NCBI GenBank assembly: GCA_002811645.1
Contig: PDIP01000089.1
Span: forward strand, 88,303-152,302
From: Corallochytrium limacisporum Hawaii
Lineage: Eukaryota; Protista; Pluriformea
Length of the DNA stretch: 64,000 nucleotides
Direction: 5' to 3'
The notes beneath the pieces were generated by a model. The model worked only from the letters and a program-made list of their open reading frames with translations. It searched no databases and was not told where the DNA came from. Position 1 is the first letter of the stretch, and each line of letters opens with the position of its first letter. Of the stretch, positions 1,004 through 47,300 are shown piece by piece. The position numbers and the translations under genes were made by a program.

Positions 1004-3664
1004 ATGTCGGGACCAAGTCCACTCAACGCGCTCAGCAATTTGGCACAGGACGTGGCCACTAGCATTGAGGGTGCGGCAGCAAAAATAAAGATCCTTGCAG
1101 ATGGACATGGCTCCAAACGTGCGGCCTCCGGTAGCGGGACAGAGCTCGGAGTGATGATGGACTCAGACTCGGACGCGGACAAATACATAGCTATGCGTCG
1201 TGTAACAGCCATGATGCTCCGGGGCGAAGACGTCATGCCCTACTTTGCACCGGTTGTAAAGAATACATTCCACCCGGCCGTGGAGATGAAGAAAATGGTG
1301 GCTATGTACCTGGCCCGCAACGCTTCCTCCGAACCGGATCTCGCGCTGTTGAGTATCAATGCATTTCAGAAGGACCTGAAGAGCAGCAATGCACTGCTTC
1401 GTGGGTCTTCGTTACGGGCACTGTGTGGTATTCAGCTCGAAGTGATCACTCCGCTGGTTATGCATTCATTGAAACAAGCATCTGCTGACATGAGCCCGTA
1501 TGTGAAGCAAATTGTAGCGCAGAGTCTGCCTCAGATGTACCGCCGCGATCCGGACGGAAACGAAGACACGGTCCTTGAAATTTTGCAGAAGTTGTTAGGT
1601 GATTTTAATCTAACCGTTCAGGGCAGCGCATTGGCGACGTGGTTGGATATTTGCCCAGCGCGGTGGGATTTTATTCATCCGATCTACAGCCGCCTGGTGC
1701 GGGCGCTACCAGACATGGATGAGTGGACGCAAATGACAGCGATGGTTGTGCTGATTCGGTATGCACGGACATTCTTTGCGAAGCCCGCAGGCTTCAATGC
1801 TGTGGAGCGAAAACTTCAGGGACTGAGCACTGAAGATGATGACATTGGTGAGATGACGCAAATGATGGGCACTATGAGCGCATTTGGTGAGAGTGCGGGA
1901 GGCGCCGTACCGGTCAATGTGCACAAGACTATGGAAGGTTTTTTCAGCGATGACGATAATGAGGATGAAAATGGTGTGACGCCAACAAAGAACAACGTCC
2001 CCGACTTGATTCTGCCGGGAAATGGTCAGAGTTCGATGTCCCCGACTCTTGGTGATGATGACGAAGAGGAAGACGACGAAGGGAACAGGAACGATGGCAT
2101 CGGTGCACTTGAGTCTCCAAGTGGCAGGGTGTCCAACGCTGAGGCGGACCAGGATCTGCAGCTTCTGCTCCGAAATTCTGTTTTCTTGACATATTCTATG
2201 AATCCTGGCGTGCTCCTTGCCGTGATTCAGCTCTACATGTACGTCGGAGGTCCCACGGAGCGTGCCCGGGTTGCACCGTTGCTGATGCGTCTCATGCGCC
2301 ATCATCGCGAGGTGCAGATCGTCGTGTTAGCCATCATTGAGAGAGTTATTCGCACTGATCATCAAGTCTTCCGTCCACACTTGCGCCGGTTCTTTGTCTT
2401 TGATGATGACAGTGAAGAAATGAAGCGGCGAAAGCTTCGCATTCTCATTCGGCTTGCCGACTCAACATCCATTAACATTTTGCTGAAGGAATTCCGAGCG
2501 TACACTCGGTTTGCGGATAAGGGTTTTGTCAAGGAGGCCATCATTGCTATCGGCCATTGCGCGATTCAGATCCCGGACGTTACGGAGGCCTGCGTGGCGT
2601 TCCTGGTCGGAAATTTGAATCAGGAGGCCGACGAAGTGATCGGGGAGAGCATTGTTGTACTGCGACGGTTGCTGCCGCTCATTGTCGGCACCCACAGCGA
2701 TGTAGTCGGCAAGTTGGCCACTATGGCAACGGAAATCAAACAGGCGAATGCTCGGGCGTGCGTGCTTTGGATGATGGGTGAGTACAATCATTTGGTACAA
2801 TCCATGGCTCCGGATGTGCTCCGCCTCTTTGCGAAGTCCTTCCCGGACGAAGAGCCCGTGGTGAAACTGCAAATTGTAAACTTGGCGGCTAAGATGCGCC
2901 TGGTACAGCCGGAGAAGATTGGCAAACTGTACATCTACATCATGGAACTAGCGAGGTACGACTCGAGTTATGATATTCGCGATCGCGCCAGAGTGCTGCG
3001 TGCATTGCTGGAGCAGCACGAAAGAGACAATCACGGGGCTCCGGAACAGGGGACGGCGGCTGCTGAGCCGGGTGCAGGAAACCACATCGATCCAGCGCGC
3101 CGGTTGCTTCTCAGTGCCAAACCGGTGCCAATGTCGAGCAGTCTGATTGTCAATGATCAAAGTTCAGACCCTATAGGAGAAAAGGGTGCATTCATGCTCG
3201 GTACCATGGCCGACGCACTGCACAGCACGACACCGGGCTACGTTGGACTGCCAGACTTCCCGGCCGAACACGATCCCGAGGCCATGCAGATGCGTCGCCA
3301 GGCCGCAGAGGAAGAGCGTCAGAAGGAGCAGGAGCGCCTTCTGCACGAGCGTAAGGCTGCAGAGGCTGCTGCACAGTCCCGAATCGGTACTCTGTCAACA
3401 GGAACAATGGGTCGCGGCTCCGGGTCTTCGTTTGGACAAGGCAGTGGCAGCTACGGCAATTTCTTTGACTCTTCGGACGAGTACGAGAGTGACGATTATG
3501 ATGAGGACGAGTCTGATGAGGAAGACTCGGACGAATCCGACGACGATGATGATGAGGACGATGATGATGACGATGAGTACGAGGACAGTGAGGATGAACT
3601 TCTCACCGATGAGGAGGACGAAGAGGACTCAGATGAGGACTCTGACAGGCCTATGATTCAGTAA
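1004..3664 (+). CDS. AP3B: AP-3 adaptor complex beta subunit (adaptin trunk plus acidic tail, no ear domain)
   Basis: Adaptin_N motifs EPDLALLSINAFQKDL, N-x-LLRGSSLRAL, DMSPYV, DMDEWTQ, LWMMGEY, APDVLR, KLQIVNLAAK and LARYDSSYDIRDRAR are typical of AP-3 beta. First ATG is at 1004 (accATG); the track start at 968 is GTG. Confidence 0.92.
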   Translation: MSGPSPLNALSNLAQDVATSIEGAAAKIKILADGHGSKRAASGSGTELGVMMDSDSDADKYIAMRRVTAMMLRGEDVMPYFAPVVKNTFHPAVEMKKMVAMYLARNASSEPDLALLSINAFQKDLKSSNALLRGSSLRALCGIQLEVITPLVMHSLKQASADMSPYVKQIVAQSLPQMYRRDPDGNEDTVLEILQKLLGDFNLTVQGSALATWLDICPARWDFIHPIYSRLVRALPDMDEWTQMTAMVVLIRYARTFFAKPAGFNAVERKLQGLSTEDDDIGEMTQMMGTMSAFGESAGGAVPVNVHKTMEGFFSDDDNEDENGVTPTKNNVPDLILPGNGQSSMSPTLGDDDEEEDDEGNRNDGIGALESPSGRVSNAEADQDLQLLLRNSVFLTYSMNPGVLLAVIQLYMYVGGPTERARVAPLLMRLMRHHREVQIVVLAIIERVIRTDHQVFRPHLRRFFVFDDDSEEMKRRKLRILIRLADSTSINILLKEFRAYTRFADKGFVKEAIIAIGHCAIQIPDVTEACVAFLVGNLNQEADEVIGESIVVLRRLLPLIVGTHSDVVGKLATMATEIKQANARACVLWMMGEYNHLVQSMAPDVLRLFAKSFPDEEPVVKLQIVNLAAKMRLVQPEKIGKLYIYIMELARYDSSYDIRDRARVLRALLEQHERDNHGAPEQGTAAAEPGAGNHIDPARRLLLSAKPVPMSSSLIVNDQSSDPIGEKGAFMLGTMADALHSTTPGYVGLPDFPAEHDPEAMQMRRQAAEEERQKEQERLLHERKAAEAAAQSRIGTLSTGTMGRGSGSSFGQGSGSYGNFFDSSDEYESDDYDEDESDEEDSDESDDDDDEDDDDDDEYEDSEDELLTDEEDEEDSDEDSDRPMIQ

Positions 3665-4677
3665 TATTTTCCCAGCAGGCCTGGTGTCCGTTTTCTTGAT
3701 TTTTAGCAAAATATTCCACATAAAGTGACTGAGGTGTCTCGAAAGATGCAATTGATTGTGACGGTGCGCGCGTGAGAGATAGCTCACAAGTTAGTTTGTT
3801 TGAATCTGGTCATAAGATTGAGGTGCATGTGGGTGGGAGAGGAAGCGAAAGAAGAATGAGTAAAACTTATACGTGGCATGCGAAGCATCCTTGGGCTGGT
3901 AGGTGTTCCCGGGATAGCTCACAGTGCCACGACTGATCTCGCGCACTCCATTTTAAACCAGGAGACATTTCCCGAGGGACTCTCCGGTTAGGTAAAAGAA
4001 CGCTGAGTTTTAATAGTTTAAATGGTTCTAAGTAAGTAAAGATCAGCGACAACAACCACTCAATGTTCCGTACACAGTCTGTTTTGAAATAGCTGCATTC
4101 AAAAACTCAGGGTTCAAAAGACAATTTTTCATATCTCCAAACAATAGAGAAAGGAGCCCCAGGTACACTGCATGCATGAAGGGTGAGTGAGTTGCCACCG
4201 ATTCCCCCTTCCCCAGGGACCACCTGCGGTGTTACCTCCCCTCTATCACAAATAACACACAACAAATTTCACACACAACCAGGACCAACAAAAAATTCTG
4301 CAATATATTTTGACGAAATTTTGCGTAGCAAAAGTGAGCGGCGGGGGAGTTCATTTGCAGTACATAATGCACTTGAACCATCTGAAGAACAGTTCCCAAT
4401 ACTAAATGTATGTCTGCCCTAGTTTCAGTATCGCCGCTGAATGGGTGCCACCTGTGAGCGCTGGTTATTGGAGACTTTCCAGTATAAACCTTGTCTTCAA
4501 CGCCCATCCAATAGTTTCGACATAACAAAAGTATGTACCAGAGAGAACTCCTATAGGAGTATTCACTATACAGCGAATGGTATTTGAGATCAGCACGTAC
4601 TAGTAACTACCCGCTCATAGTCCGTGCCATTGTGTTTCATATCTCGGGACTACACAAACTACGTACATTAAGCAATC

Positions 4678-36008: not shown

Positions 36009-36512
36009 TTACCTTTGTTCAATGGTAATCTTCTTGGTTTCCGGTTTCTCAGGTTCGGAAGTCCTGGGAATAGCCACGCGTAGGAGGCCATCGCCATAAG
36101 AGGCCTTGACCTGGTCCTCGGTTACACCAGCAGGCAGACCGAAACTGCGCTGGAAGCTGCCATGATAGCGAGAGTAGAAGGTAGATCCATCATCCATCTT
36201 CTTTTCCTGCTCTTCGCCGTACTTGCCACTCACCACCAAGTTGTTGTCATTGACCTCGATGGAGAGATCTTCAGGCTTAATACCAGGCATCTCACCTTCG
36301 ATCACCCACTGACCTTCGGTTTCCTGGACATGCCAATGCGGCTGTGCCTTCTTGTGGGCCTCAGTCACGGGCCAGCTTTGCTGGAACGGTCTCCAGACGG
36401 TGGGACTGAAGAACTCGTCATCAAAGAAGCTACGCATTGACGGAACAAGAGACATGGTGGATCTTGTGTTTGTCGGAGTAGTATGTACGTTTCTAAGGAA
36501 TGTTCTAAGCAT
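36009..36512 (-). CDS. Small heat-shock protein (HSP20/alpha-crystallin domain)
   Basis: EMPGIKPEDLSIEV, LVVSG, RYHGSFQRSFGLP, VKASYGDGLLRVAIP and C-terminal IxI (ITI). The main start may be the second ATG at 36455. Confidence 0.95.
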   Translation of the reverse strand: MLRTFLRNVHTTPTNTRSTMSLVPSMRSFFDDEFFSPTVWRPFQQSWPVTEAHKKAQPHWHVQETEGQWVIEGEMPGIKPEDLSIEVNDNNLVVSGKYGEEQEKKMDDGSTFYSRYHGSFQRSFGLPAGVTEDQVKASYGDGLLRVAIPRTSEPEKPETKKITIEQR

Positions 36513-37064: not shown

Positions 37065-38600
37065 TCAGATATTGTGTATGTATTGTTAACCTCGTTGTGA
37101 TATGGAAACTGTGTATGAGTTCAGTATAGTTTATAGAAAGTTATAAAGAACATATATGAATATGACCTATAGTAGACGTGACGGGGACCAGGAAAACGGG
37201 GAACGTGAGGCCAGTCTGAGGTCCCCGGCCTTGTGGATTCTGGGGGATCGGCTTGGCACAAGATCACAAGAGGGGTCGATTGCGTTGATGACCCGATTTC
37301 AGAGTTCGGTACATGAGAGCATGAGCATGGTGGAATCAGGAATCTAGAACATAAAGAAGTGAGCGGGAGAGTGGGCAGGGGATGAGTACGGGACTATGTG
37401 AGATGAGCGTAAGCAATGTAGGCGGTGATATTGTGCGCAGGGCCACAGTATTCGGCTCCTGCACACACCCAAATCACTGCAACAAACTTCTGGTCCACCG
37501 TGACGACCGGTTTCATGGTTGGCTCATTTTGTTGACCACACACCGGTGCTTTTAAACAGTGGACGGTATCATTGTTTGCGTTAGAGATCCGGTGCCAGGT
37601 CTGCACAGTCAAGTGACCCGCCCTCCTTCAAATAGGCCTCCAACCTCTCCCCCTTCAACAGAGAGCGTACACGGTAGCGCCGTTCCCTGCCTACAAAAAA
37701 AAGATCAGCAGTTTCGATTGAAATTGATGGAAAATAGATTTGATTGCGAAGCCGTCACCCGCCCCAACTTACCCCCCCCGCGCGCCCTCTCTCCCGCTGG
37801 CTTTTCTCCACGCGGGGCTCTCGCCGCGAACTCTCGGACATCCCCCCTCCCCCCGCCCGGGGGGGGGGGGGGAGCCGAGAGCGGCCGGTGACACCAGGCA
37901 GGGAGTCTCTCGTCTGTTCACCACTTTAGTACGAATTTTAGTACATTGGATACGGACAAGAAAGTTCATTCCCAACAGAGGGAGACGTAGTGCTCAACAC
38001 TTTTGAGCAATATTTGGTACCTAATGTATTTCGAGAAATTTTCGTGTCCCGAAACTTTCATTGGTCTGGGTCGAATCCCCCAGATTGTTCCAGTACATTC
38101 ATTATCCAGATCACGAGGCAAAGGTGCATCCTGCTCCATACTTGCATGGTCTCATTTTGTTCGGGTCGATTCCAGAACTCTCAGTTTAACCCCACTTATT
38201 TACTATAGAGAGTAGTCCCTTCTGTCATTTCGGGAACAAAACACGAGCATTGGAAATGACCTGGAATGTCCGGGTCGATGAGCGGGTAGGGACCGAAGAA
38301 CAAGGGGAGGGGAAAGGCAAAACCCGCCCGGGAGCGAAGCCTGTTGCCAACCGGAGATAAGCCGCAGCATCGCCCATCTCTACACTCTGTTGGGCATCCG
38401 TCTCATGATTTTTCATGACTGTGATGTTCCAAAGAATTGCATGACCTTACAATGGTACCATTTTTTAATCACATAATCTCTGGAAGGTATTTATATCGCT
38501 GCTTTTTGACATTGCTAAATGCTCTCTGATTTAGATCATCAAGTCTTTACATCAAGTGGTGGCTGAACAATCATCGTATAGGTGTTATCGAGATTCTAAA

Positions 38601-39065
38601 ATGGCTCTGTTTCCTGTAATTAATACGGTTTTTGACCGTATCTTCGAGGAACCTGTGTACGTGGTACCTGATCGCCGTCGCGTGCCTACTGATGGTTGCT
38701 GTTCCTCAGCGCGCAGAGTCGCCCGCTGGCACATCTCCCACCCCGTGGAAAACGAGGCCGTGATCGAGGGCGAGCTGCCTGGTGTCCGTGCAGAAGATGT
38801 CAGCGTGGAGCTCAAGGAAGAAGGTCTAGTGATCAGTGGTCACTGGCCTGTGGAGGACGCCTCTGATCCCTCTGCCGCTGCTGCGGATCTAGAGGGAGAC
38901 AAGAAACCGACTCCAGCGAGCTTCAACAAGGTTTTCAACCTGGCCGATGGTGTCACGGAAAATCACATACACGCAAAGTATGTAGATGGCCTACTGCGCG
39001 TGACAGTGACCCGCCCAGAGCCGGTCCAGCAACCCCGTAAGCAGATTAACATTGCCCGTCTGTAA
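38601..39065 (+). CDS. Small heat-shock protein (HSP20), divergent paralog
   Basis: ELPGVRAEDVSVEL, LVISG, SFNKVFNL, IHAKYVDGLLRVTV and C-terminal INI. First ATG is 38601; the track start at 38556 is GTG. Confidence 0.92.
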   Translation: MALFPVINTVFDRIFEEPVYVVPDRRRVPTDGCCSSARRVARWHISHPVENEAVIEGELPGVRAEDVSVELKEEGLVISGHWPVEDASDPSAAAADLEGDKKPTPASFNKVFNLADGVTENHIHAKYVDGLLRVTVTRPEPVQQPRKQINIARL

Positions 39066-39377
39066 ATCCGGCGGAGCTTTATTTGCTCTTCGGCTGTAGC
39101 ACCAAGTTGAATAGATCTTGATAAAATTTTCAGCCAGATAAATATATGTATTGCTCCAGTATTATACTTATTTTAGTGTCGATCAGTCTGTACTTCTTTC
39201 CAGCTCTGACTTCTTCCGTGCTGGGTCTTTGAATCGGTCTTTCACTTCAGCATGATCTTCAACGATTCACTGCAGAACGGTATGAACCAATGACTTCAAA
39301 GTGGCGGACTCTTCACTGTTGAATGAGGCTATGCACAATTATTCAAGCTCTCATGCATGTGCGGGACAGTGGCTGAT

Positions 39378-39812
39378 TCATGGATTTGCGGAGGGGTCGT
39401 CCAGAGGCTGGTTGGGGTGTTGCATTTGCTTGAGAGAGTGGTAAACAAAGTATGTGTAGAGAACTATGAAAATGGAACCCAACAGGATACTTGAGAGGGC
39501 ACAAAGACGTGCTCTGCGGCTGTTAGAATGGGCAACGAGATATTCACCCTTGACCTGTGCCTTCTGGGATAGGTGGTTGTAGTACAGAGCAAGCGCACCG
39601 AAGGGCCAGCAACAGCAAATGGTACCAAACAGGCTCGTACAGAAATGATCGCCAACGTCCGTCTGGGAATCATCAATTCTCATGTCGCGAAACGTGTGCT
39701 TGGGTTCCTCATCAGTGATACAGTCTTCAAGATCTCGGACATAGACAGGAGGAGCACCACCGTTGCTCTCCCTATTCTTCTCGTCGAGGGGTACCTTTTC
39801 GTAATCAACCAT
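39378..39812 (-). CDS. CD225/dispanin (IFITM-like) protein 1, short form
   Basis: DHFCTSLFGTICCCWPFGALALYYNHLSQKAQVKGEYLVAHSNSRRARLCALSSILLG matches the CD225 pattern (D-H..S.F..CC..G..A..Y......GD...A...S..A......I..G) and is followed by a TM helix. Confidence 0.9.
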   Translation of the reverse strand: MVDYEKVPLDEKNRESNGGAPPVYVRDLEDCITDEEPKHTFRDMRIDDSQTDVGDHFCTSLFGTICCCWPFGALALYYNHLSQKAQVKGEYLVAHSNSRRARLCALSSILLGSIFIVLYTYFVYHSLKQMQHPNQPLDDPSANP

Positions 39813-41549
39813 TCTTGTTGTTTGAGACTCTCCGAAGACCAGTATTCTAATGTGGATTGTAAGTTGAACTCACCAAAGACATGCGAGTGTGTGGCTAGAA
39901 ATACCAAGTTACCACCCTGGTCCCTCACTCAGTACCAAATCCTTGCACTTCTCCTGACACGACTGCCACGATAGCGCGATCCCCTTCCCCCCCCCTCCCC
40001 GCGGCAATCACGAAAAGGCTTTCTGGATTTTTTCTGTGATGTATCTGTGATGTGTCCGTCACGCACTGGAGGCGTCTGCTGTGGTCCCCCTTCCTCCTTT
40101 CCTCCTCCCCCTCCTCCACCNNNNNNNNNNNNNNNNNNNNNNNNNNNNNNNNNNNNNNNNNNNNNNNNNNNNNNNNNNNNNNNNNNNNNNNNNNNNNNNN
40201 NNNNNNNNNNNNNNNNNNNNNNNNNNNNNNNNNNNNNNNNNNNNNNNNNNNNNNNNNNNNNNNNNNNNNNNNNNNNNNNNNNNNNNNNNNNNNNNNNNNN
40301 NNNNNNNNNNNNNNNNNNNNNNCCCCCCCCCCCCCCCCCGTTAAAACGTCCATACACCCAGAGATTTTTGTGCGCAGTCATCGGGTCGTCGAGAGCGGGG
40401 TTGGCGGATGGGTAAATTATCAGCGTACGCATACCTTTGCCTGGTGACCAGCGAAAGCTCCAACGATGGGCGCGCCGCCGGTAAGTCCGAATGAAAACAG
40501 CCAAGACATGTTAATTGGTAGTGAAACGATAGGAAAAGCAACAGGCGAAGACTCACAGAGTGAGCATGAGGTCGAGAACTTTGTTGGCCGGCAGTGACCT
40601 TAAGAATTCGGTGCCCCCCCCCCCCTTCCCCCTGCCCAGGGACCCAAAATACTACTAAACGAACCCCCTGCACACTACCAATACTCGCGTTCTCGTGTTA
40701 ATACGATAGTACTGAAGAAATTGGGCGTGCCAGGTGGGTTTACACCTGCCATTTTGTATTAAGAGGGAGCTATATTGGGTCAGTGCTTTGTCCGACCGCG
40801 AGGCAACCAACACGACGACCGCAAACTACTAGGAAAAAAGATCGAAAGTGACAAACGGGGAATTTTATGAATTGGCTTTGTGTGCATATATTACCGGTAC
40901 AGCGTGTATCAAACGGAGGGGGCAGGGTCGGAGAAGGGAACACCATCTTTTAAACAAAGAATTCTTTGGCACATGGGAAACCCGCCATGTGTGTGTGTGT
41001 GTAACCCGGAGGCCACCCGTAGGCCACAGGAAGTCACAAGGAACCAAACCAACACAAGTAGAAAGACTAAAACGAAAAAGATTGGCCAAACGATAAAGGA
41101 GAAAACCCTCAACCCCCCAAGAGCAGCTTGACATACAGAAGAATCGGGCGGAAAAGCTAGTCGCGAACCAACACACACGAAGAGAGGACGATGGATACAA
41201 AAAGGCCTGGTGCGCACACGAACAACGAACTCGCATAGGACAGACAGGCACCGGTTGGCGCACTCTGGACATCATTTGATCTCTCCTCCATCATGAGGTG
41301 CCCTCGCCCTCGCCACCAAGGTTGGGAGAGGTGGTAGCGTACGGTGGGTCCCTTCCGGGAAGCGCGCCTGACATTTAAAGTAGGTGTTCCCCTGCCCTCT
41401 CTTCCTCTATCGCCATATCTCCTTTCTCTCCGGTCTTTCTCAGGTAGGTCGTCGCGGGGAGAAGGGGAGAGGAAGTAAATGTGGGGAGATCTGAGATGTG
41501 GGTTGGGAAACACCTGGTCCTCTCAAGATCTACGCCGGTTCGTGTCTCG

Positions 41550-42347
41550 TCAATGAGCACCGGTTCGCTCTCGCGAACTTGAGTCGAGGGATCCCATTGC
41601 GGGCCCTTTAGTTGCCATATGCGCGGGTATGGCAGGCACGGCTGTCACCTCTGTCATCTGTGGGAGGCCCTTCAGAGGGATTTGCTCCTTTATGAAGGGT
41701 GGAGACATGTAAGGGTCATCTAGAGAGTGATGCCGAGGTAGCCCTTCTTGAGGAAAGACGGAATGAGTGGATTCGTGAGGGTTGTGGCGCCAGGGGTGGT
41801 GGTGGTGGGCAGTTTTCACATGCGTGCAGGTTTGATCATCATGCCCTTTGCAGTACTCCCTCACAACTTCTTGGCATTTATCACTGGCCGGAGACAGGCG
41901 GCAGTAGAGGTTGTTGCAAGGAGTGGCGGGATCCTCAACGGGCCAAGGGCAGGTGTTGTGAGGTGGAGGAACGTCGACAGCCATGAAAGTCATGTAGGCC
42001 ACCAGACCATTGAAACCGACCAGGATGCTCATGATGGCAAAAGCGCGCGCAACACGGCTGTAGGAGTGGGCCCGGTGGTAGTCACCCTTGAGCTGTGCAT
42101 TCTGAGAGCGGTGGTTGTAGTACAGACCCAGCAGACCGAAGGGCATGCAGCAGGCAATTGTAGCAAACAGGCTCTTAAAGAAGTGGTCCTCAACCTCGGG
42201 CTGGATCTCAACGGATTCAATCTCAATGTCGCGGAGCATGCTCTTCGTCTCCTCCGTGTGGGAGCTCTTTTCGACTTCCCCGTAGGTAGGAGGAGCCTCA
42301 AATTCTTCTGTGGGCTCCTCCGTGGGTACCTTTTCGTACTCAGTCAT
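41550..42347 (-). CDS. CD225/dispanin (IFITM-like) protein 2 with one 6-Cys C-terminal module
   Basis: DHFFKSLFATIACCMPFGLLGLYYNHRSQNAQLKGDYHRAHSYSRVARAFAIMSILVG; Cys module at 41826-41951; His-rich tail. Confidence 0.9.
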   Translation of the reverse strand: MTEYEKVPTEEPTEEFEAPPTYGEVEKSSHTEETKSMLRDIEIESVEIQPEVEDHFFKSLFATIACCMPFGLLGLYYNHRSQNAQLKGDYHRAHSYSRVARAFAIMSILVGFNGLVAYMTFMAVDVPPPHNTCPWPVEDPATPCNNLYCRLSPASDKCQEVVREYCKGHDDQTCTHVKTAHHHHPWRHNPHESTHSVFPQEGLPRHHSLDDPYMSPPFIKEQIPLKGLPQMTEVTAVPAIPAHMATKGPAMGSLDSSSRERTGAH

Positions 42348-42351
42348 GGTT
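42043..42351. repeat. 309-bp perfect direct repeat, copy 1 (copy 2 at 44003-44311)
   Basis: Base-for-base identical at an offset of 1960; covers the first ~101 codons of CD225 genes 2 and 3. Confidence 0.9.
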
Positions 42352-42903
42352 TAGTGTTATGAGCGCTTTCGTCTATTCTAGAAACTATAGTAGGCAATCC
42401 TGAACCGTCCCGAGATGGGGGGACTGATCCAACCGTATTGTCTTACTTACCAGAAACGATCATACCGAAAAGCGTGATGTTAGGCCGAATCAAGCCACAA
42501 ACGAAATAACTTTTTCAAAGTCTTTAAACGTCACTATTTAGCCACGTCAAAAGTGCGCCAAAGTACGGACTTCCGGATCTAAAGACACGCGACCAAAATT
42601 GATTTCGTCGGAGATATCCCATAAAGTATTCCATAGGCATTCCGTTCGGAGTGGTCGTTTTTTGCACAGTATCGTATGTACGAAACCGACGTCCACTAGC
42701 TAACTCTCAACACAGGTCAAGTATTCCTAAAACATCATTAATACTAAAAAACGCCTTTATAAACTGAGAGCGCGCAATAACCGAGTCCGTCTGCCATGAA
42801 ATACGTTTTACTAAAAATCAATCTTCATGGAAACTGTGCATGACTGTACAGCGGAACGGGGTGCGCCAAATGATCGACGGATGTTACGGAATATACCACT
42901 CAC

Positions 42904-44307
42904 TTAGAAACTCTCGCTGATCTTGTCCTTCAGACCTTTGAAAGTGTTCTTCAGGGTGTGCTTCAACTGCTTCAAAACAGGCTTGGCAGCCTCGTCAAGG
43001 TCTTCCTTTTCATGCTTGCAGCCTTCGTTATCCTTATTTTGCAAGCAGAAGTTGACCTTCTGGTACTGGCACTGCAGAGACTTCATGTCCTTCTTGCATT
43101 CATCAGTATTGCAGGGGTTCTGCTCGTCGGGCACGCCATAGTCGCAGAACTGGACATCGTCCTTAATGTGCTTCCTCAGGTTCTTCAGGGCCTTCTTCAG
43201 TGCCTTGTGGTCCTCACAGGTTTGGTCACCACCATTAGCTCCATCACCCTTAGTGCAGTACTTGCGGATAGCCTTGCGGCACTTGCGCTCAGCAAGAGAC
43301 TCCTGGCACTCGGGCAAATTGCAAGGGCTGTTGGGGTTCTCCTTGTCGAAGGGACACAGGTCGATCTGGATGGTCATGTCCTCAGGCACAGGGTCGATGA
43401 CGACCTGGGGCAGATCAGCGGGGGCTTCAATGGGGAGGACTCCGGGAATAACAGCGTTAAGGGACTGGATCTCCTCAGGGGTCAAGGGGCGAGCAGAGGA
43501 AATCTGACTCTTCAGGGCCGCTCCGTCCATGCCGCTGTCGACATTAATGTCCACGGGTTGCATGGGCACCAGAGGCAGAGGGATGATGGCCGGTTGCGGT
43601 TCGAAGCAAGGAGGAGGAGGAGGAGGAGGGTGCTCACCGCCGGGGGGAGGAGGAGGAGGAGGGTGCTCGCCGCCGGGGGGAGGAGGAGGAGGAGGAGGAG
43701 GAGGACCACAAGGAGGGCCATGGTGGTGGTGATGATGGCGATGATGGTGTCCAGGGAAAGGCATCTTGCCCTCACGCAAACGCCTGCAGACATCATCCTC
43801 GTGGCGCTCGTGGCAGAACTCCCTCACAACGTCGTGGCACTTCTCACTGGCCGGAGACAGGCGGCAGTAGAGGTTGTAGCAAGGAGTGGCGGGATCCTCA
43901 ACGGGCCAAGGGCAGGCGTGGTGAGGAGGAATGCCGACAGCCATGCAAGTCATGTAGGCCATCAGACCAGCGGTACCGAGAAGGATGCTCGTGATGGCAA
44001 AGGCGCGCGCAACACGGCTGTAGGAGTGGGCCCGGTGGTAGTCACCCTTGAGCTGTGCATTCTGAGAGCGGTGGTTGTAGTACAGACCCAGCAGACCGAA
44101 GGGCATGCAGCAGGCAATTGTAGCAAACAGGCTCTTAAAGAAGTGGTCCTCAACCTCGGGCTGGATCTCAACGGATTCAATCTCAATGTCGCGGAGCATG
44201 CTCTTCGTCTCCTCCGTGTGGGAGCTCTTTTCGACTTCCCCGTAGGTAGGAGGAGCCTCAAATTCTTCTGTGGGCTCCTCCGTGGGTACCTTTTCGTACT
44301 CAGTCAT
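42904..44307 (-). CDS. CD225/dispanin (IFITM-like) protein 3 with three 6-Cys modules and a poly-His/poly-Pro linker
   Basis: Same CD225 domain as protein 2. Cys modules at 43786-43914, 43216-43356 and 43018-43146. Confidence 0.92.
   Translation of the reverse strand: MTEYEKVPTEEPTEEFEAPPTYGEVEKSSHTEETKSMLRDIEIESVEIQPEVEDHFFKSLFATIACCMPFGLLGLYYNHRSQNAQLKGDYHRAHSYSRVARAFAITSILLGTAGLMAYMTCMAVGIPPHHACPWPVEDPATPCYNLYCRLSPASEKCHDVVREFCHERHEDDVCRRLREGKMPFPGHHHRHHHHHHGPPCGPPPPPPPPPPGGEHPPPPPPPGGEHPPPPPPPCFEPQPAIIPLPLVPMQPVDINVDSGMDGAALKSQISSARPLTPEEIQSLNAVIPGVLPIEAPADLPQVVIDPVPEDMTIQIDLCPFDKENPNSPCNLPECQESLAERKCRKAIRKYCTKGDGANGGDQTCEDHKALKKALKNLRKHIKDDVQFCDYGVPDEQNPCNTDECKKDMKSLQCQYQKVNFCLQNKDNEGCKHEKEDLDEAAKPVLKQLKHTLKNTFKGLKDKISESF
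43610..43704 (-). repeat. Coding (CCT)n microsatellite with a 33-bp tandem unit (PPPPPPPGGEH x2)
   Basis: Units at 43631-43663 and 43664-43696, embedded in GGA repeats on the plus strand. Confidence 0.85.
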
Positions 44308-44311
44308 GGTT
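44003..44311. repeat. 309-bp perfect direct repeat, copy 2
   Basis: Identical to 42043-42351. Confidence 0.9.
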
Positions 44312-47300
44312 GGTTTTGTAATCGCTTTCGTCTATAATAGAAACTATTAAAGACTATACCCATACTCTCCTTAGATTGATTGTCTTAAATAAGTGCATTC
44401 TTGTAAATACCAGAAAACTAATGATCTTATAAGGCCTTGTAATTATTGCCCACTATTTTGCAAACATATTATAGAATTAAAAGCCACGATGATACCAACT
44501 TCGAACATCTTATAAAACAATTAAGGGTCAGTCCGGACACGCACAAAAGCATCGCAACCCACACAAAGACACGCGACCAAAAAGTAACAAGAGCGGCGAA
44601 GAACCTACAGAACTCTTGGAATGGCAAAACCGCACGCACTTGGAGGCAACTCTGCACAGGGGCGAACACCCAGACACACCGCCCCGGCAGTAACTGGGCT
44701 CATTTTCCAGTACTTTCTCTACCGCGACAGGTTGCTCTGTCGTTTTCTAGCAAAGAATTTTCTTCTCCTGTCCTCTCTCCGCCCCTCGGTAAAATCATTC
44801 TGTGCCCTAGTCCCTTCGGGCCAAAAGGAAAAACATTGGCAAGCGCCGGAGGGTAGGGCGGAGGCAAACAAAAAAAAGAGGCGAACACAAAAAATCAGAC
44901 CGCCGCGTGAAAAATGTCAGTACTTTTAGTACTTAATGGGAACCGTCATGAATATTCTGCACGCCGGACAAGGACAGGCCTTGATGAAAAGATTTGTGAT
45001 GACGGGTCCCAAAAACCCCGCTCAATTGAGAGGGCGTGGAACCCAAAATTCGCTGGCCGCATAGTGCACGCCGGGATGCCACTTTGGTAAGTCCGGGAAG
45101 TAATTGGGCACTATTTTTATAATAAATGTATTACATTTGCTATGGTAAAACATGCCATGTTTACAAAATTGCGGTACAGCGCCCATCCCGTCCGAAGGGA
45201 GGTCGTCCAGACCTCGGGCGCCCTCTCCCAAGAAAAATTTCTTCATATTCACACTATGTAGAATCCCTCTGTCTTATCTCTCTCAAACTCTATATATTCA
45301 ATATACACAGATTCTCAAGACTGATATTACTATATCCACAATACCTATTTACAAAAATGTCCAAACTTACCCACCGGCCAGTCAGCAGTCCTGCGGCAGT
45401 ATTTCAGTACATTCACTATGAATCGTTCTCCCAATGACTGCCACATCACTTGTTGCCCTCGGTGACAACATTTCGACCCTAAAAGCCCTTCCGCGATCCA
45501 AAGCGCCAAGTCGGGGCTCGTTCGAGGGAAATTTCTCGGTTTGTTCAATATTAGAACAAGCCCAGCTTCGATCTTCCTGGTGTCCTACCACCACTTGTGT
45601 CCAGATGCTTCCTTTGTTTCACAAACGCCGTCACGCCAACCCATTTCGGGGCCCGTAGTAAGAGTACCGGACATCCGGTGCTGACGTTCGATGCATTCAC
45701 CTAATTTCTGGACGGATTCCACGGAAAATTCCCATACATTTACTATGTACAGCCCTTACTCAAAGCCGTCTTATTTCACCAGCGCCAGAACCCCTCTCCC
45801 CTCCCCAGTGGCATAACGCTGTAGCGGTGCTTCTGCTAAGGTCTGATGATTACAGCGCATGCGCTACCTCCACTGCATCATATTGTCCGCTTTTCATTAT
45901 TTACTCCGGTACAATGTATATTCAGAGATACCGATAATCATGGTTTTAGACCTATGCAAAGTACAGACGTTGCCCTTGAGTCGACCCAGTCTATCACGAC
46001 ATTTGCAGCCGGTCGGGTGAACAGAAGGGGACCCAAAGCTTTTCTTATCGCCGCTCCCCCTAAAAACAAAGGCAAAGAAATAAGCGGCGGCCGCCTCTCC
46101 TCCCTCTCCTTCTTCTTCCCTCCCCCCCCCTCCCCCTTCTTCGCCGGTGCCCCGAAAAGGGAGAGGGGAAGAAAGGGAGAACACGCCGCTTTCTTTCCTT
46201 TTATTTCATAATGAATATATGGCAGAAAAAAGACTCCCGAATTCACAATCCCCCACTTTGCCCCTTAACCTGATCACCTCGCTCCCCAAGCGGAAGCCGT
46301 GGCGTGGGGAAGAAGGGGGGGGGAGAGGAGAGGGGCGGGTTTTGGCGTTTCGCTTGGGTTCCCCCTGTCCAATTAATCCGGTACTGAACCCAGGGGCGAA
46401 AGTGATCGAAGGAACTACCAAGCGCAAAAATGCTCATTTCTATCATCATCATCGTCCTCGCCTGCTGTCCATGAACATTTGGCTCCATTCACCTCAGTAT
46501 ATTCGGTATGAGAATTCACGGGTCCTGTCGCCACATTTGCTTCTCACAGTGGCCCCTTGCTAAGACCAGAAGACTGCGGTGGGGGGGGTGTCCCCCCCCT
46601 CGCACACGAAGTCGATAATTGATTCACTATGACAACTTGCTGATTCTTCTTTCTCTTGTGATCCTTCTGGACGATACAAAGGGGGTTTTGAGATAACATG
46701 CAATCGATGACGATGGGGGGTGCCTTGCGCGCTATGGTAGCTCTGTTGATTTTGTGGGACTACAACGTCGCTCGGAAAAGGTTAGGTCATTTTCTATGGA
46801 AGTAACCGCACCACAGGGAAAAAAAATTACAAGGGAGCGAGAGAGGACCGAACAACCCCTCCAACAACACCCCCCCCCGGGGGGGAGGGGGCGCCATTGG
46901 CTCCTAATAGCTGTGCTACGGGAGCTGTGATTGTTGGAGTGGGTGTGTATGCCCCAGGGGTAACTGGTCAGTACTTAGACCTACCGTTTTTTGCAAAGCC
47001 CGTCGTTCTTACCTACGCTTCCTTTTTGTAGTATTCCCTTAAACCCCAGTTGGTTGCGGGGTGATTTCATTTATTCGGGGCCTATTTTACCTTCCGTCCC
47101 CCTACCGGGGAGTGGCAGGGATGCGAATAGTGCAGTATGGAACTGGCTGTTTGTTGAACTGGTGATGGGGATTGGGCTCATCGAGTGATGTTGTGTCTCG
47201 GACGGGGTAGTGGGTTCAGTGATGCTTTGAAGTTTCATCGTTGATGATGGATGTTGGTGTTGGTGGTGTTCACTCTGTACCCGAGATCTTGTGGGTCCGG

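What the first reader, a model, noticed from the sequence alone, without database searches (positions are those of the whole stretch)
39378..44307. Tandem array of three IFITM/dispanin (CD225) genes with graded, probably extracellular, Cys-module extensions in an intron-poor, apparently unicellular genome
Seen: three same-strand CD225 genes of 144, 265 and 467 aa carrying 0, 1 and 3 copies of a 6-Cys module after the C-terminal TM helix. Known: CD225 proteins (IFITM1-3, PRRT2, TRARG1, SynDIG) regulate membrane fusion; vertebrate IFITMs block viral fusion and sit in tandem clusters; their C-terminal tails are usually short and lumenal/extracellular. Inference: this is an independently expanded CD225 family in which a fusion-regulating anchor has acquired a variable disulfide-bonded ectodomain. 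It is a candidate pre-metazoan antiviral, cell-fusion or cell-recognition system, and the best candidate for an undescribed system in this window.
Basis: partly seen in the sequence, partly recalled or inferred. Interest (0 to 1): 0.85.

Follow-up and report, generated by a model that had tools for sequence, protein, structure and literature searches.

The report
CD225 membrane proteins with cysteine-repeat ectodomain
A single-celled relative of animals has three neighbouring genes of the family that includes the human antiviral IFITM proteins, and two of them carry an outward-facing tail built from a small, unnamed cysteine-rich domain; this is an apparently undescribed protein design, but nothing shows that it fights viruses.

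Summary
Three intronless minus-strand ORFs (144, 265, 467 aa) pass the Pfam CD225 cut-off and carry 0, 1 and 3 copies of a six-cysteine module. The gap is intergenic and unbridged. The genome matches Corallochytrium limacisporum (24.1 Mb, inferred). The module is not unique to this locus: about 250 copies occur in 72 proteins of marine protists and probably prokaryotes. Their recognised partner domains are extracellular types (Sushi, TSP1, REJ, LCCL), and none has CD225. It has no Pfam family and no fold match, yet folds confidently (pLDDT 88). This supports an outward-facing tail. The 'graded, variable system' is overstated. It looks like one main gene (467 aa), a plain paralogue, and a partial copy that shares an identical 309 bp. 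IFITM3-like PPxY/YxxPhi motifs, the di-cysteine and a similar helix segment are present. The Gly95 and Arg85 equivalents are absent, and modules did not change between two strains (little power). Best reading: a CD225 anchor displaying an adhesion or coat-type ectodomain at the surface or in the vacuole (about 45%); antiviral about 12%. Earlier scan notes cover only this same DNA.

The parts
39378..39812 (-). CD225 gene A, 144 aa: plain form with a 25-residue tail after the domain and no Cys module; YxxPhi at aa 4, PPxY at aa 21
   Evidence: RNA-like contigs cover 39133-39762
40121..40322 (.). assembly gap, intergenic, flanked by C-runs, not bridged by any contig laid
41550..42347 (-). CD225 gene B, 265 aa: partial duplicate of gene C with one module and an unrelated tail of about 75-90 aa; possibly weakly expressed
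41826..41951 (-). six-Cys module of gene B (aa 133-174)
42043..42351 (-). 309 bp identical to 44003-44311 (cytosolic N-terminus and most of CD225): recent gene conversion or duplication
42581..42598 (+). 18-bp element upstream of gene B, identical upstream of gene C, in otherwise diverged flanks; candidate cis-element
42904..44307 (-). CD225 gene C, 467 aa: acidic cytosolic N-terminus, CD225, then a predicted outward-facing tail of about 340 aa
44233..44253 (-). overlapping PPxY and YxxPhi motifs (aa 19-25), arranged as in IFITM3 residues 17-23; same in gene B at 42273-42293
43957..44151 (-). CD225 domain of gene C (aa 53-117)
43786..43914 (-). module 1 of gene C (aa 132-174), followed by an R-x-x-R site at aa 175-178
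43573..43767 (-). His-rich then poly-Pro spacer (aa 181-245: 49% Pro, 11 His)
43216..43356 (-). module 2 of gene C (aa 318-364)
43153..43206 (-). cationic amphipathic helix after module 2 (aa 368-385; hydrophobic moment 0.64, net +5)
43018..43146 (-). module 3 of gene C (aa 388-430)
42925..42978 (-). cationic amphipathic helix after module 3 (aa 444-461; moment 0.64, net +4); module plus helix is a twice-repeated unit
44565..44582 (+). 18-bp element upstream of gene C

Best explanation
A small local CD225 family in which the CD225 domain serves as a type II membrane anchor and sorting tag for a structural or binding ectodomain. Shown: CD225 domain, motif content, module copy number, transcription without introns, and the module's wide occurrence beside extracellular domains. 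Inferred: N-terminus and loop in the cytosol, di-Cys palmitoylated, tail in the secretory lumen and then at the cell surface or inside the large vacuole; the six Cys form three disulfides in a three-helix mini-domain; the poly-Pro rod holds two module-plus-cationic-helix units away from the membrane, where they bind cell coat, substrate, anionic surfaces or partner proteins; PPxY and YxxPhi let NEDD4-type ligases and adaptor complexes retrieve and turn over the protein. Gene C (467 aa) is the main product, gene A is the plain older paralogue, and gene B is a partial copy under relaxed or condition-specific use.
For: CD225 hits. Type II topology in the cryo-EM structure of PRRT1, the nearest solved relative (E 6.8e-5). 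Loop aa 77-102 has 5 basic and 1 acidic residue. Module found in 72 outside proteins, about 250 copies, 18 of 53 Met-starting ones with a crude signal peptide. Partners are Sushi, TSP1, EGF, ephrin-receptor-like, LDLa, F5/8, LCCL, REJ/PKD, GEX2 Ig-like and M11 peptidase domains. AlphaFold2 model of the module, pLDDT 88, three helices. At least four WW-plus-HECT ligases in the genome. Large vacuole in this organism (10.1101/2020.11.12.379420). Gene C has high codon bias and the deepest RNA-like contig (the tool warns that depth cannot rank genes).
Against: No function is known for the module in any protein, so 'adhesion or coat' is argued from company and from the Pro-rich rod only. No N-glycosylation sequon in any of the three proteins. 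Topology and disulfides were not measured. A plain TM helix would do as an anchor, so keeping an intact CD225 domain suggests that it has an activity of its own.
Confidence: 0.45

Rival explanations
1. Canonical CD225 role: a regulator of endosome, vacuole or secretory vesicle fusion (like PRRT2, TRARG1 and IFITM3 with SNAREs) or an auxiliary subunit of another membrane protein (like PRRT1 with AMPA receptors), with the tail as a lumenal sensor or cargo binder; the His run could sense pH or metal.
For: Family function (PMC11730294). Endocytic and ubiquitin-ligase motifs, di-Cys and a helix segment like IFITM3 59-68 (moment 0.41-0.44). Large vacuole.
Against: [quoted passage not shown] Both are needed for SNARE binding in IFITM3 and PRRT2. 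PRRT1 also lacks the second Gly, so this is not decisive.
Confidence: 0.2
2. IFITM3-like antiviral restriction factor: it stiffens endosomal or plasma membranes and blocks fusion of enveloped viruses, and the tail may bind virions.
For: Overlapping PPxY and YxxPhi arranged as in IFITM3, the di-Cys, and two of the three polar helix residues (Ser61, Thr65 equivalents) are kept. Even mycobacterial CD225 proteins give moderate influenza resistance in human cells (PMC4488726). Tandem arrangement.
Against: Gly95 and Arg85 equivalents are absent. Tandem pairs and long tails also occur in bacterial CD225 genes, so clustering is not diagnostic. No sign of rapid change between strains (little power). 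The genes appear transcribed in what are probably axenic cultures. I found no report of a virus of this organism (not searched in depth).
Confidence: 0.12
3. Gene C is a membrane-tethered precursor: a convertase cuts at R-x-x-R (aa 175-178) and releases the His/Pro-rich part with two cationic amphipathic helices that act on membranes, for example against bacteria.
For: R-x-x-R directly after module 1, and two Lys-rich helices of moment 0.64; each follows a module as a repeated unit.
Against: R-x-x-R is common by chance (also at aa 98 and 341). The helices could equally pack on each other as a coiled coil. No processing data.
Confidence: 0.08
4. Cell-recognition or mating-fusion system with interchangeable ectodomains on a common anchor, kept uniform by gene conversion.
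For: Codons 1-101 of genes B and C are identical, while codons 102-174 differ with dN/dS about 1 (24 N, 7 S). Outside relatives of the module sit with REJ and GEX2 Ig-like domains, which are known from gamete-surface proteins (that link is from my own knowledge).
Against: dN/dS near 1 on so few changes fits relaxed constraint on gene B equally well. No amino-acid difference in any module between two strains. Only three genes.
Confidence: 0.07

Closest known systems
CD225/dispanin family (Pfam PF04505)
   Same: Two hydrophobic segments, di-Cys, conserved loop; scores twice the curated cut-off.
   Different: Tail after the domain is 350 and 148 aa in genes C and B. Published eukaryotic members typically have under 10 aa (PMC3282796), and 14 of 16 bacterial examples checked have at most 16 aa. 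That paper's eukaryotic range was animals, Monosiga and Ectocarpus only.
IFITM3 (dispanin subfamily A)
   Same: Overlapping PPxY and YxxPhi in the N-terminus, helix segment with Ser and Thr kept before the di-Cys, tandem genes.
   Different: No Gly95, Arg85, Phe75 or Phe78 equivalents; three residues between the di-Cys and the conserved Gly, as in PRRT1; large ectodomain; no interferon context.
PRRT1/SynDIG4 (PDB 9zks)
   Same: Only solved relative found (E 6.8e-5 single sequence, 3e-7 profile); type II CD225 fold; also lacks the second Gly.
   Different: Its Pro-rich region is cytosolic and N-terminal; here the Pro-rich region is C-terminal and predicted outside. PRRT1 keeps the central Arg.
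Unnamed six-Cys repeat of marine microbial surface proteins (for example Mucochytrium quahogii UniRef A0A7S2S1U1, A0A7S2SN26)
   Same: Same invariant six Cys and near-invariant Pro; up to 36-45% identity per module.
   Different: There it is repeated up to 14 times in large secreted or surface proteins; none carries CD225. No Pfam family, no solved fold.

Membership tests
CD225/dispanin | PF04505 score over the curated cut-off | tested here: met
   59.5-60.8 bits against 27.1
CD225/dispanin | Two hydrophobic segments separated by a loop of about 25-30 residues | tested here: met
   aa 55-78 and 98-127
CD225/dispanin | Di-cysteine in the first hydrophobic segment | tested here: met
   C66-C67 (genes B, C), C66-C68 (gene A); palmitoylation itself not testable
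CD225/dispanin | Short C-terminal tail (typical, under 10 aa) | tested here: not met
   350 and 148 aa after the domain in genes C and B; 2 of 16 bacterial examples also have about 105 aa, so it is typical rather than defining
CD225/dispanin | Type II topology, C-terminus outside | not testable with these tools
   Inferred from PRRT1, loop charge and module partners
IFITM (antiviral subfamily) | G91xxxG95 oligomerisation motif | tested here: not met
   First Gly kept; second is Arg (B, C) or Val (A). Register set through the PRRT1 alignment and the family alignment; IFITM3 numbering from PMC7665892 and my own knowledge of its sequence, no direct IFITM3 alignment was run
IFITM (antiviral subfamily) | [quoted passage not shown] | tested here: not met
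   Gln in all three where PRRT1 has Arg
IFITM (antiviral subfamily) | Amphipathic helix 59-68 with polar S61, N64, T65 | tested here: inconclusive
   Ser and Thr kept, Asn replaced by Ala or Gly; moment 0.41-0.44
IFITM (antiviral subfamily) | N-terminal PPxY and YxxPhi motifs | tested here: met
   Overlapping at aa 19-25 in B and C; separate in A; WW-HECT ligases present
IFITM (antiviral subfamily) | Phylogenetic grouping with vertebrate IFITMs | not tested
   No animal or choanoflagellate sequences were obtainable by reference (searches returned only self)
IFITM (antiviral subfamily) | Inhibition of virus-cell fusion; inducible by infection | not testable with these tools
   Needs bench assays
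Any described Cys-rich domain (Pfam, NCBIfam, PHROGs, PDB) | Profile or fold match of the six-Cys module | tested here: not met
   No consistent Pfam hit among 142 copies; PHROGs only weak, unnamed hits; NCBIfam none; PDB sequence none; Foldseek PDB and viral none, VIA best Z 3.1, Atlas weak. For a 48-residue model this does not prove a new fold

The most novel reading that the evidence does not exclude
A unicellular holozoan outside choanoflagellates has a CD225 protein that couples IFITM3-like endosomal sorting and membrane-fusion control to a ligand-binding ectodomain made of an undescribed domain, acting as a pre-metazoan antiviral or cell-contact checkpoint.
Probability: 0.15. Interest if true: 0.85.

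Novelty: new variant of a known kind. Interest (0 to 1): 0.5.

Why it matters
First, it extends CD225 proteins to Corallochytrium, beyond the published eukaryotic range (animals, Monosiga, Ectocarpus; PMC3282796). It also shows IFITM3-like sorting motifs in a protist, whereas such signals were proposed to have been refined in vertebrates (PMC4488726). Whether this is ancestry or convergence is open. Second, it gives a CD225 protein with a large folded ectodomain, a design I did not find elsewhere. Third, it defines an unnamed, confidently folding 43-residue domain spread over marine protists and probably prokaryotes, which merits its own family model. The organism can be stably transfected, so location, topology and function can be tested directly.

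Tried and rejected
Word-index homologue searches with the three proteins returned only themselves (two had 8-14 candidates, so they say little). ESM Atlas feature searches gave nothing. A single-sequence fold of the last 157 aa was poor (pLDDT 55) and was used only as a hint of helices. Viral contigs gave no relative of gene A. Metagenome and genome scans gave one CD225 each at 33-35% identity. The module was not found in 401 planctomycete genomes. Frameshift origin of the gene B tail: a Pro-run in another frame resembles gene C weakly (E 0.02), but it is a by-product of the His codon run and the DNA score equals shuffles (27 against a median of 27), so rejected. Heat-shock co-regulation with the neighbouring small HSP genes through a TTCCAGTACWTT motif: the motif is enriched genome-wide (45 against 6 control), but by my reading of the N-termini its neighbours are mixed genes, and many copies lie inside ORFs, so no support. 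Collapsed or mis-assembled repeat: DNA contigs show single-copy depth over gene C and double depth over the shared 309 bp, so rejected. Circular RNA-like contig through gene C, the spacer and the shared 5' part: best explained by the identical 309 bp plus read-through in the assembly graph; not evidence of a circle. No tree was built, for lack of eukaryotic CD225 sequences by reference.
Full report
Observation. Each passes the Pfam CD225 cut-off by a wide margin (59.5-60.8 bits against 27.1). A six-cysteine module with spacing 10-4-8-7-(7 to 12) occurs 0, 1 and 3 times, always after the second hydrophobic segment. The assembly gap 40121-40322 is intergenic, flanked by C-runs and bridged by no contig of four runs. 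No frame depends on it, but the position of gene A next to B rests on the scaffold alone. B and C are joined by overlapping DNA contigs, with about double depth on their shared 309 bp, so both copies are real.

Organism. The assembly has 24,109,830 bases in 286 contigs and the window's long ORFs are unspliced. This matches Corallochytrium limacisporum (24.1 Mb, 0.0 introns per CDS kb; PMC5560861). The identification is an inference from these matches. The two RNA-like runs of 2015 differ from each other as two close strains would, in line with the India and Hawaii strains. The genome has one more, distant CD225 gene (107 aa, 22% identity). The module occurs nowhere else in it.

Expression and history. 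RNA-like contigs lie over all three ORFs without intron joints or coding indels, and leave the spacer next to the gap and most of the region upstream of C uncovered. Contig depth is about 3000-3700 over gene C, 360-640 over A and 14-25 over the part unique to B. The tool warns that such depth cannot rank genes, so this is a hint only. It agrees with codon bias, which is high over most of C and lowest in the tail of B (reference set from this window only). B and C are identical over codons 1-101, while their upstream DNA diverges beyond about 40 bp. This points to recent gene conversion on an older duplication. Over codons 102-174 dN/dS is about 1 on 31 changes, against 0.42 for A versus C. Relaxed constraint on B and diversifying selection cannot be told apart on these counts. 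The tail of B beyond about residue 190 has no detectable homology to C. Between strains, no module has an amino-acid change; C differs by four silent and two or three replacement changes outside the modules, and two of three changes in the tail of B are replacements. The counts are small. The 0-1-3 series is therefore best read as a plain paralogue, a main elaborated gene and a partial copy.

The module. A profile of the four copies searched against 1.84 billion representatives found 75 other proteins. With a wider profile, 72 of them hold about 250 copies, none has a CD225 match, and 18 of 53 Met-starting ones have a crude signal peptide. Six Cys are invariant across the 142 aligned copies (these were selected by their Cys pattern) and one Pro nearly so. 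Recognised partner domains are of extracellular type: Sushi, M11 peptidase, TSP1, EGF, ephrin-receptor-like, LDLa, F5/8, LCCL, REJ/PKD and GEX2 Ig-like. Hosts include Mucochytrium quahogii, eukaryotic contigs and contigs whose gene content looks archaeal or bacterial (inferred from neighbours). The module has no Pfam, NCBIfam, PHROGs or PDB sequence match of weight. AlphaFold2 with the 142-row alignment gives a confident three-helix mini-domain (pLDDT 88) with no clear fold match, which for 48 residues does not prove a new fold. Disulfides were not examined. Single copies score at most 39 bits against a threshold near 35.5, so CD225 proteins with one module elsewhere could have been missed.

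Topology. The nearest solved relative, PRRT1, is a type II protein with a re-entrant first helix and one spanning helix (10.64898/2026.06.24.734257). The loop before the last helix is basic and the N-terminus carries cytosolic-type motifs. With the module's company, this makes an outward-facing tail likely (about 90%, my estimate). In gene C the tail reads: module 1, an R-x-x-R site, a His run, a poly-Pro rod, a spacer, then twice a module followed by a Lys-rich amphipathic helix (moment 0.64). Such tails are unusual: under 10 aa is typical in the published survey. Of 16 bacterial examples, 14 have at most 16 aa and two, a tandem pair, about 105 aa without the module (one further locus was mis-read by my script and left out).

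IFITM likeness. B and C have PPxY and YxxPhi overlapping as in IFITM3 residues 17-23, a segment resembling helix 59-68 with Ser and Thr kept, and the di-Cys. WW-plus-HECT ligases that could read PPxY are in the genome. [quoted passage not shown] The register comes from the PRRT1 alignment and my knowledge of the IFITM3 sequence, not from a direct alignment. These are CD225 proteins, not IFITMs. That they might work like IFITM3 is not excluded, since even mycobacterial CD225 proteins restrict influenza moderately in human cells.

Mechanism. Most likely (0.45) the CD225 domain anchors and sorts a binding or structural ectodomain at the cell surface or in the lumen of the large vacuole, with turnover through PPxY and YxxPhi. 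Rivals are a regulator of vesicle fusion or an auxiliary subunit with a lumenal sensor (0.20), an antiviral factor (0.12), a precursor of shed membrane-active helices (0.08) and a recognition system (0.07). All functional steps are inferred.

Verdict. Real, transcribed, and an architecture that I found neither in the papers searched nor among the module's other carriers: a new variant of a known family, plus an unnamed domain. The antiviral, fusion or recognition 'system' has no direct support. Earlier notes of this scan on these features concern the same DNA and are not independent. Interest 0.5.

Noticed in passing
window 36009-36512 (-) and 38556-39065 (+): Divergent pair of small heat-shock protein (HSP20) genes directly downstream of the CD225 array.
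   Followed up: partly
window 37052, 38088, 44705; 45 exact copies genome-wide: TTCCAGTACWTT is about seven-fold enriched over its reversed control (45 against 6). Neighbouring genes look mixed, not chaperones; role unknown.
   Followed up: yes
window 42581-42598 and 44565-44582: Identical 18-bp element about 240-270 bp upstream of genes B and C, with only one near match elsewhere in the genome; candidate cis-element.
   Followed up: partly
L004:1399-1722 (G000:C277): A fourth, solitary and divergent CD225-like gene of 107 aa with a single Cys, just at the Pfam cut-off.
   Followed up: partly
G000:C274:74143-76200 (outside the window, about 52 kb from the array): A 1241-aa open frame with WW and HECT domains (NEDD4-type ligase) on the same contig; at least four such genes in the genome.
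   Followed up: no
P0003/P0078, P0012, P0018: The six-Cys module accompanies GEX2 Ig-like, M11 gametolysin-like and REJ/PKD domains in very large protist proteins; the domain deserves its own family model.
   Followed up: partly
L088 and L091 (G079:C56): Tandem pair of bacterial CD225 genes with tails of about 105 aa after the domain, unusual for the family.
   Followed up: no
L012:3551-7138, L013:2809-3825, L018:2092-4155: The module also occurs on contigs that look archaeal or bacterial, so it has a patchy cross-domain spread that suggests transfer among marine microbes.
   Followed up: partly
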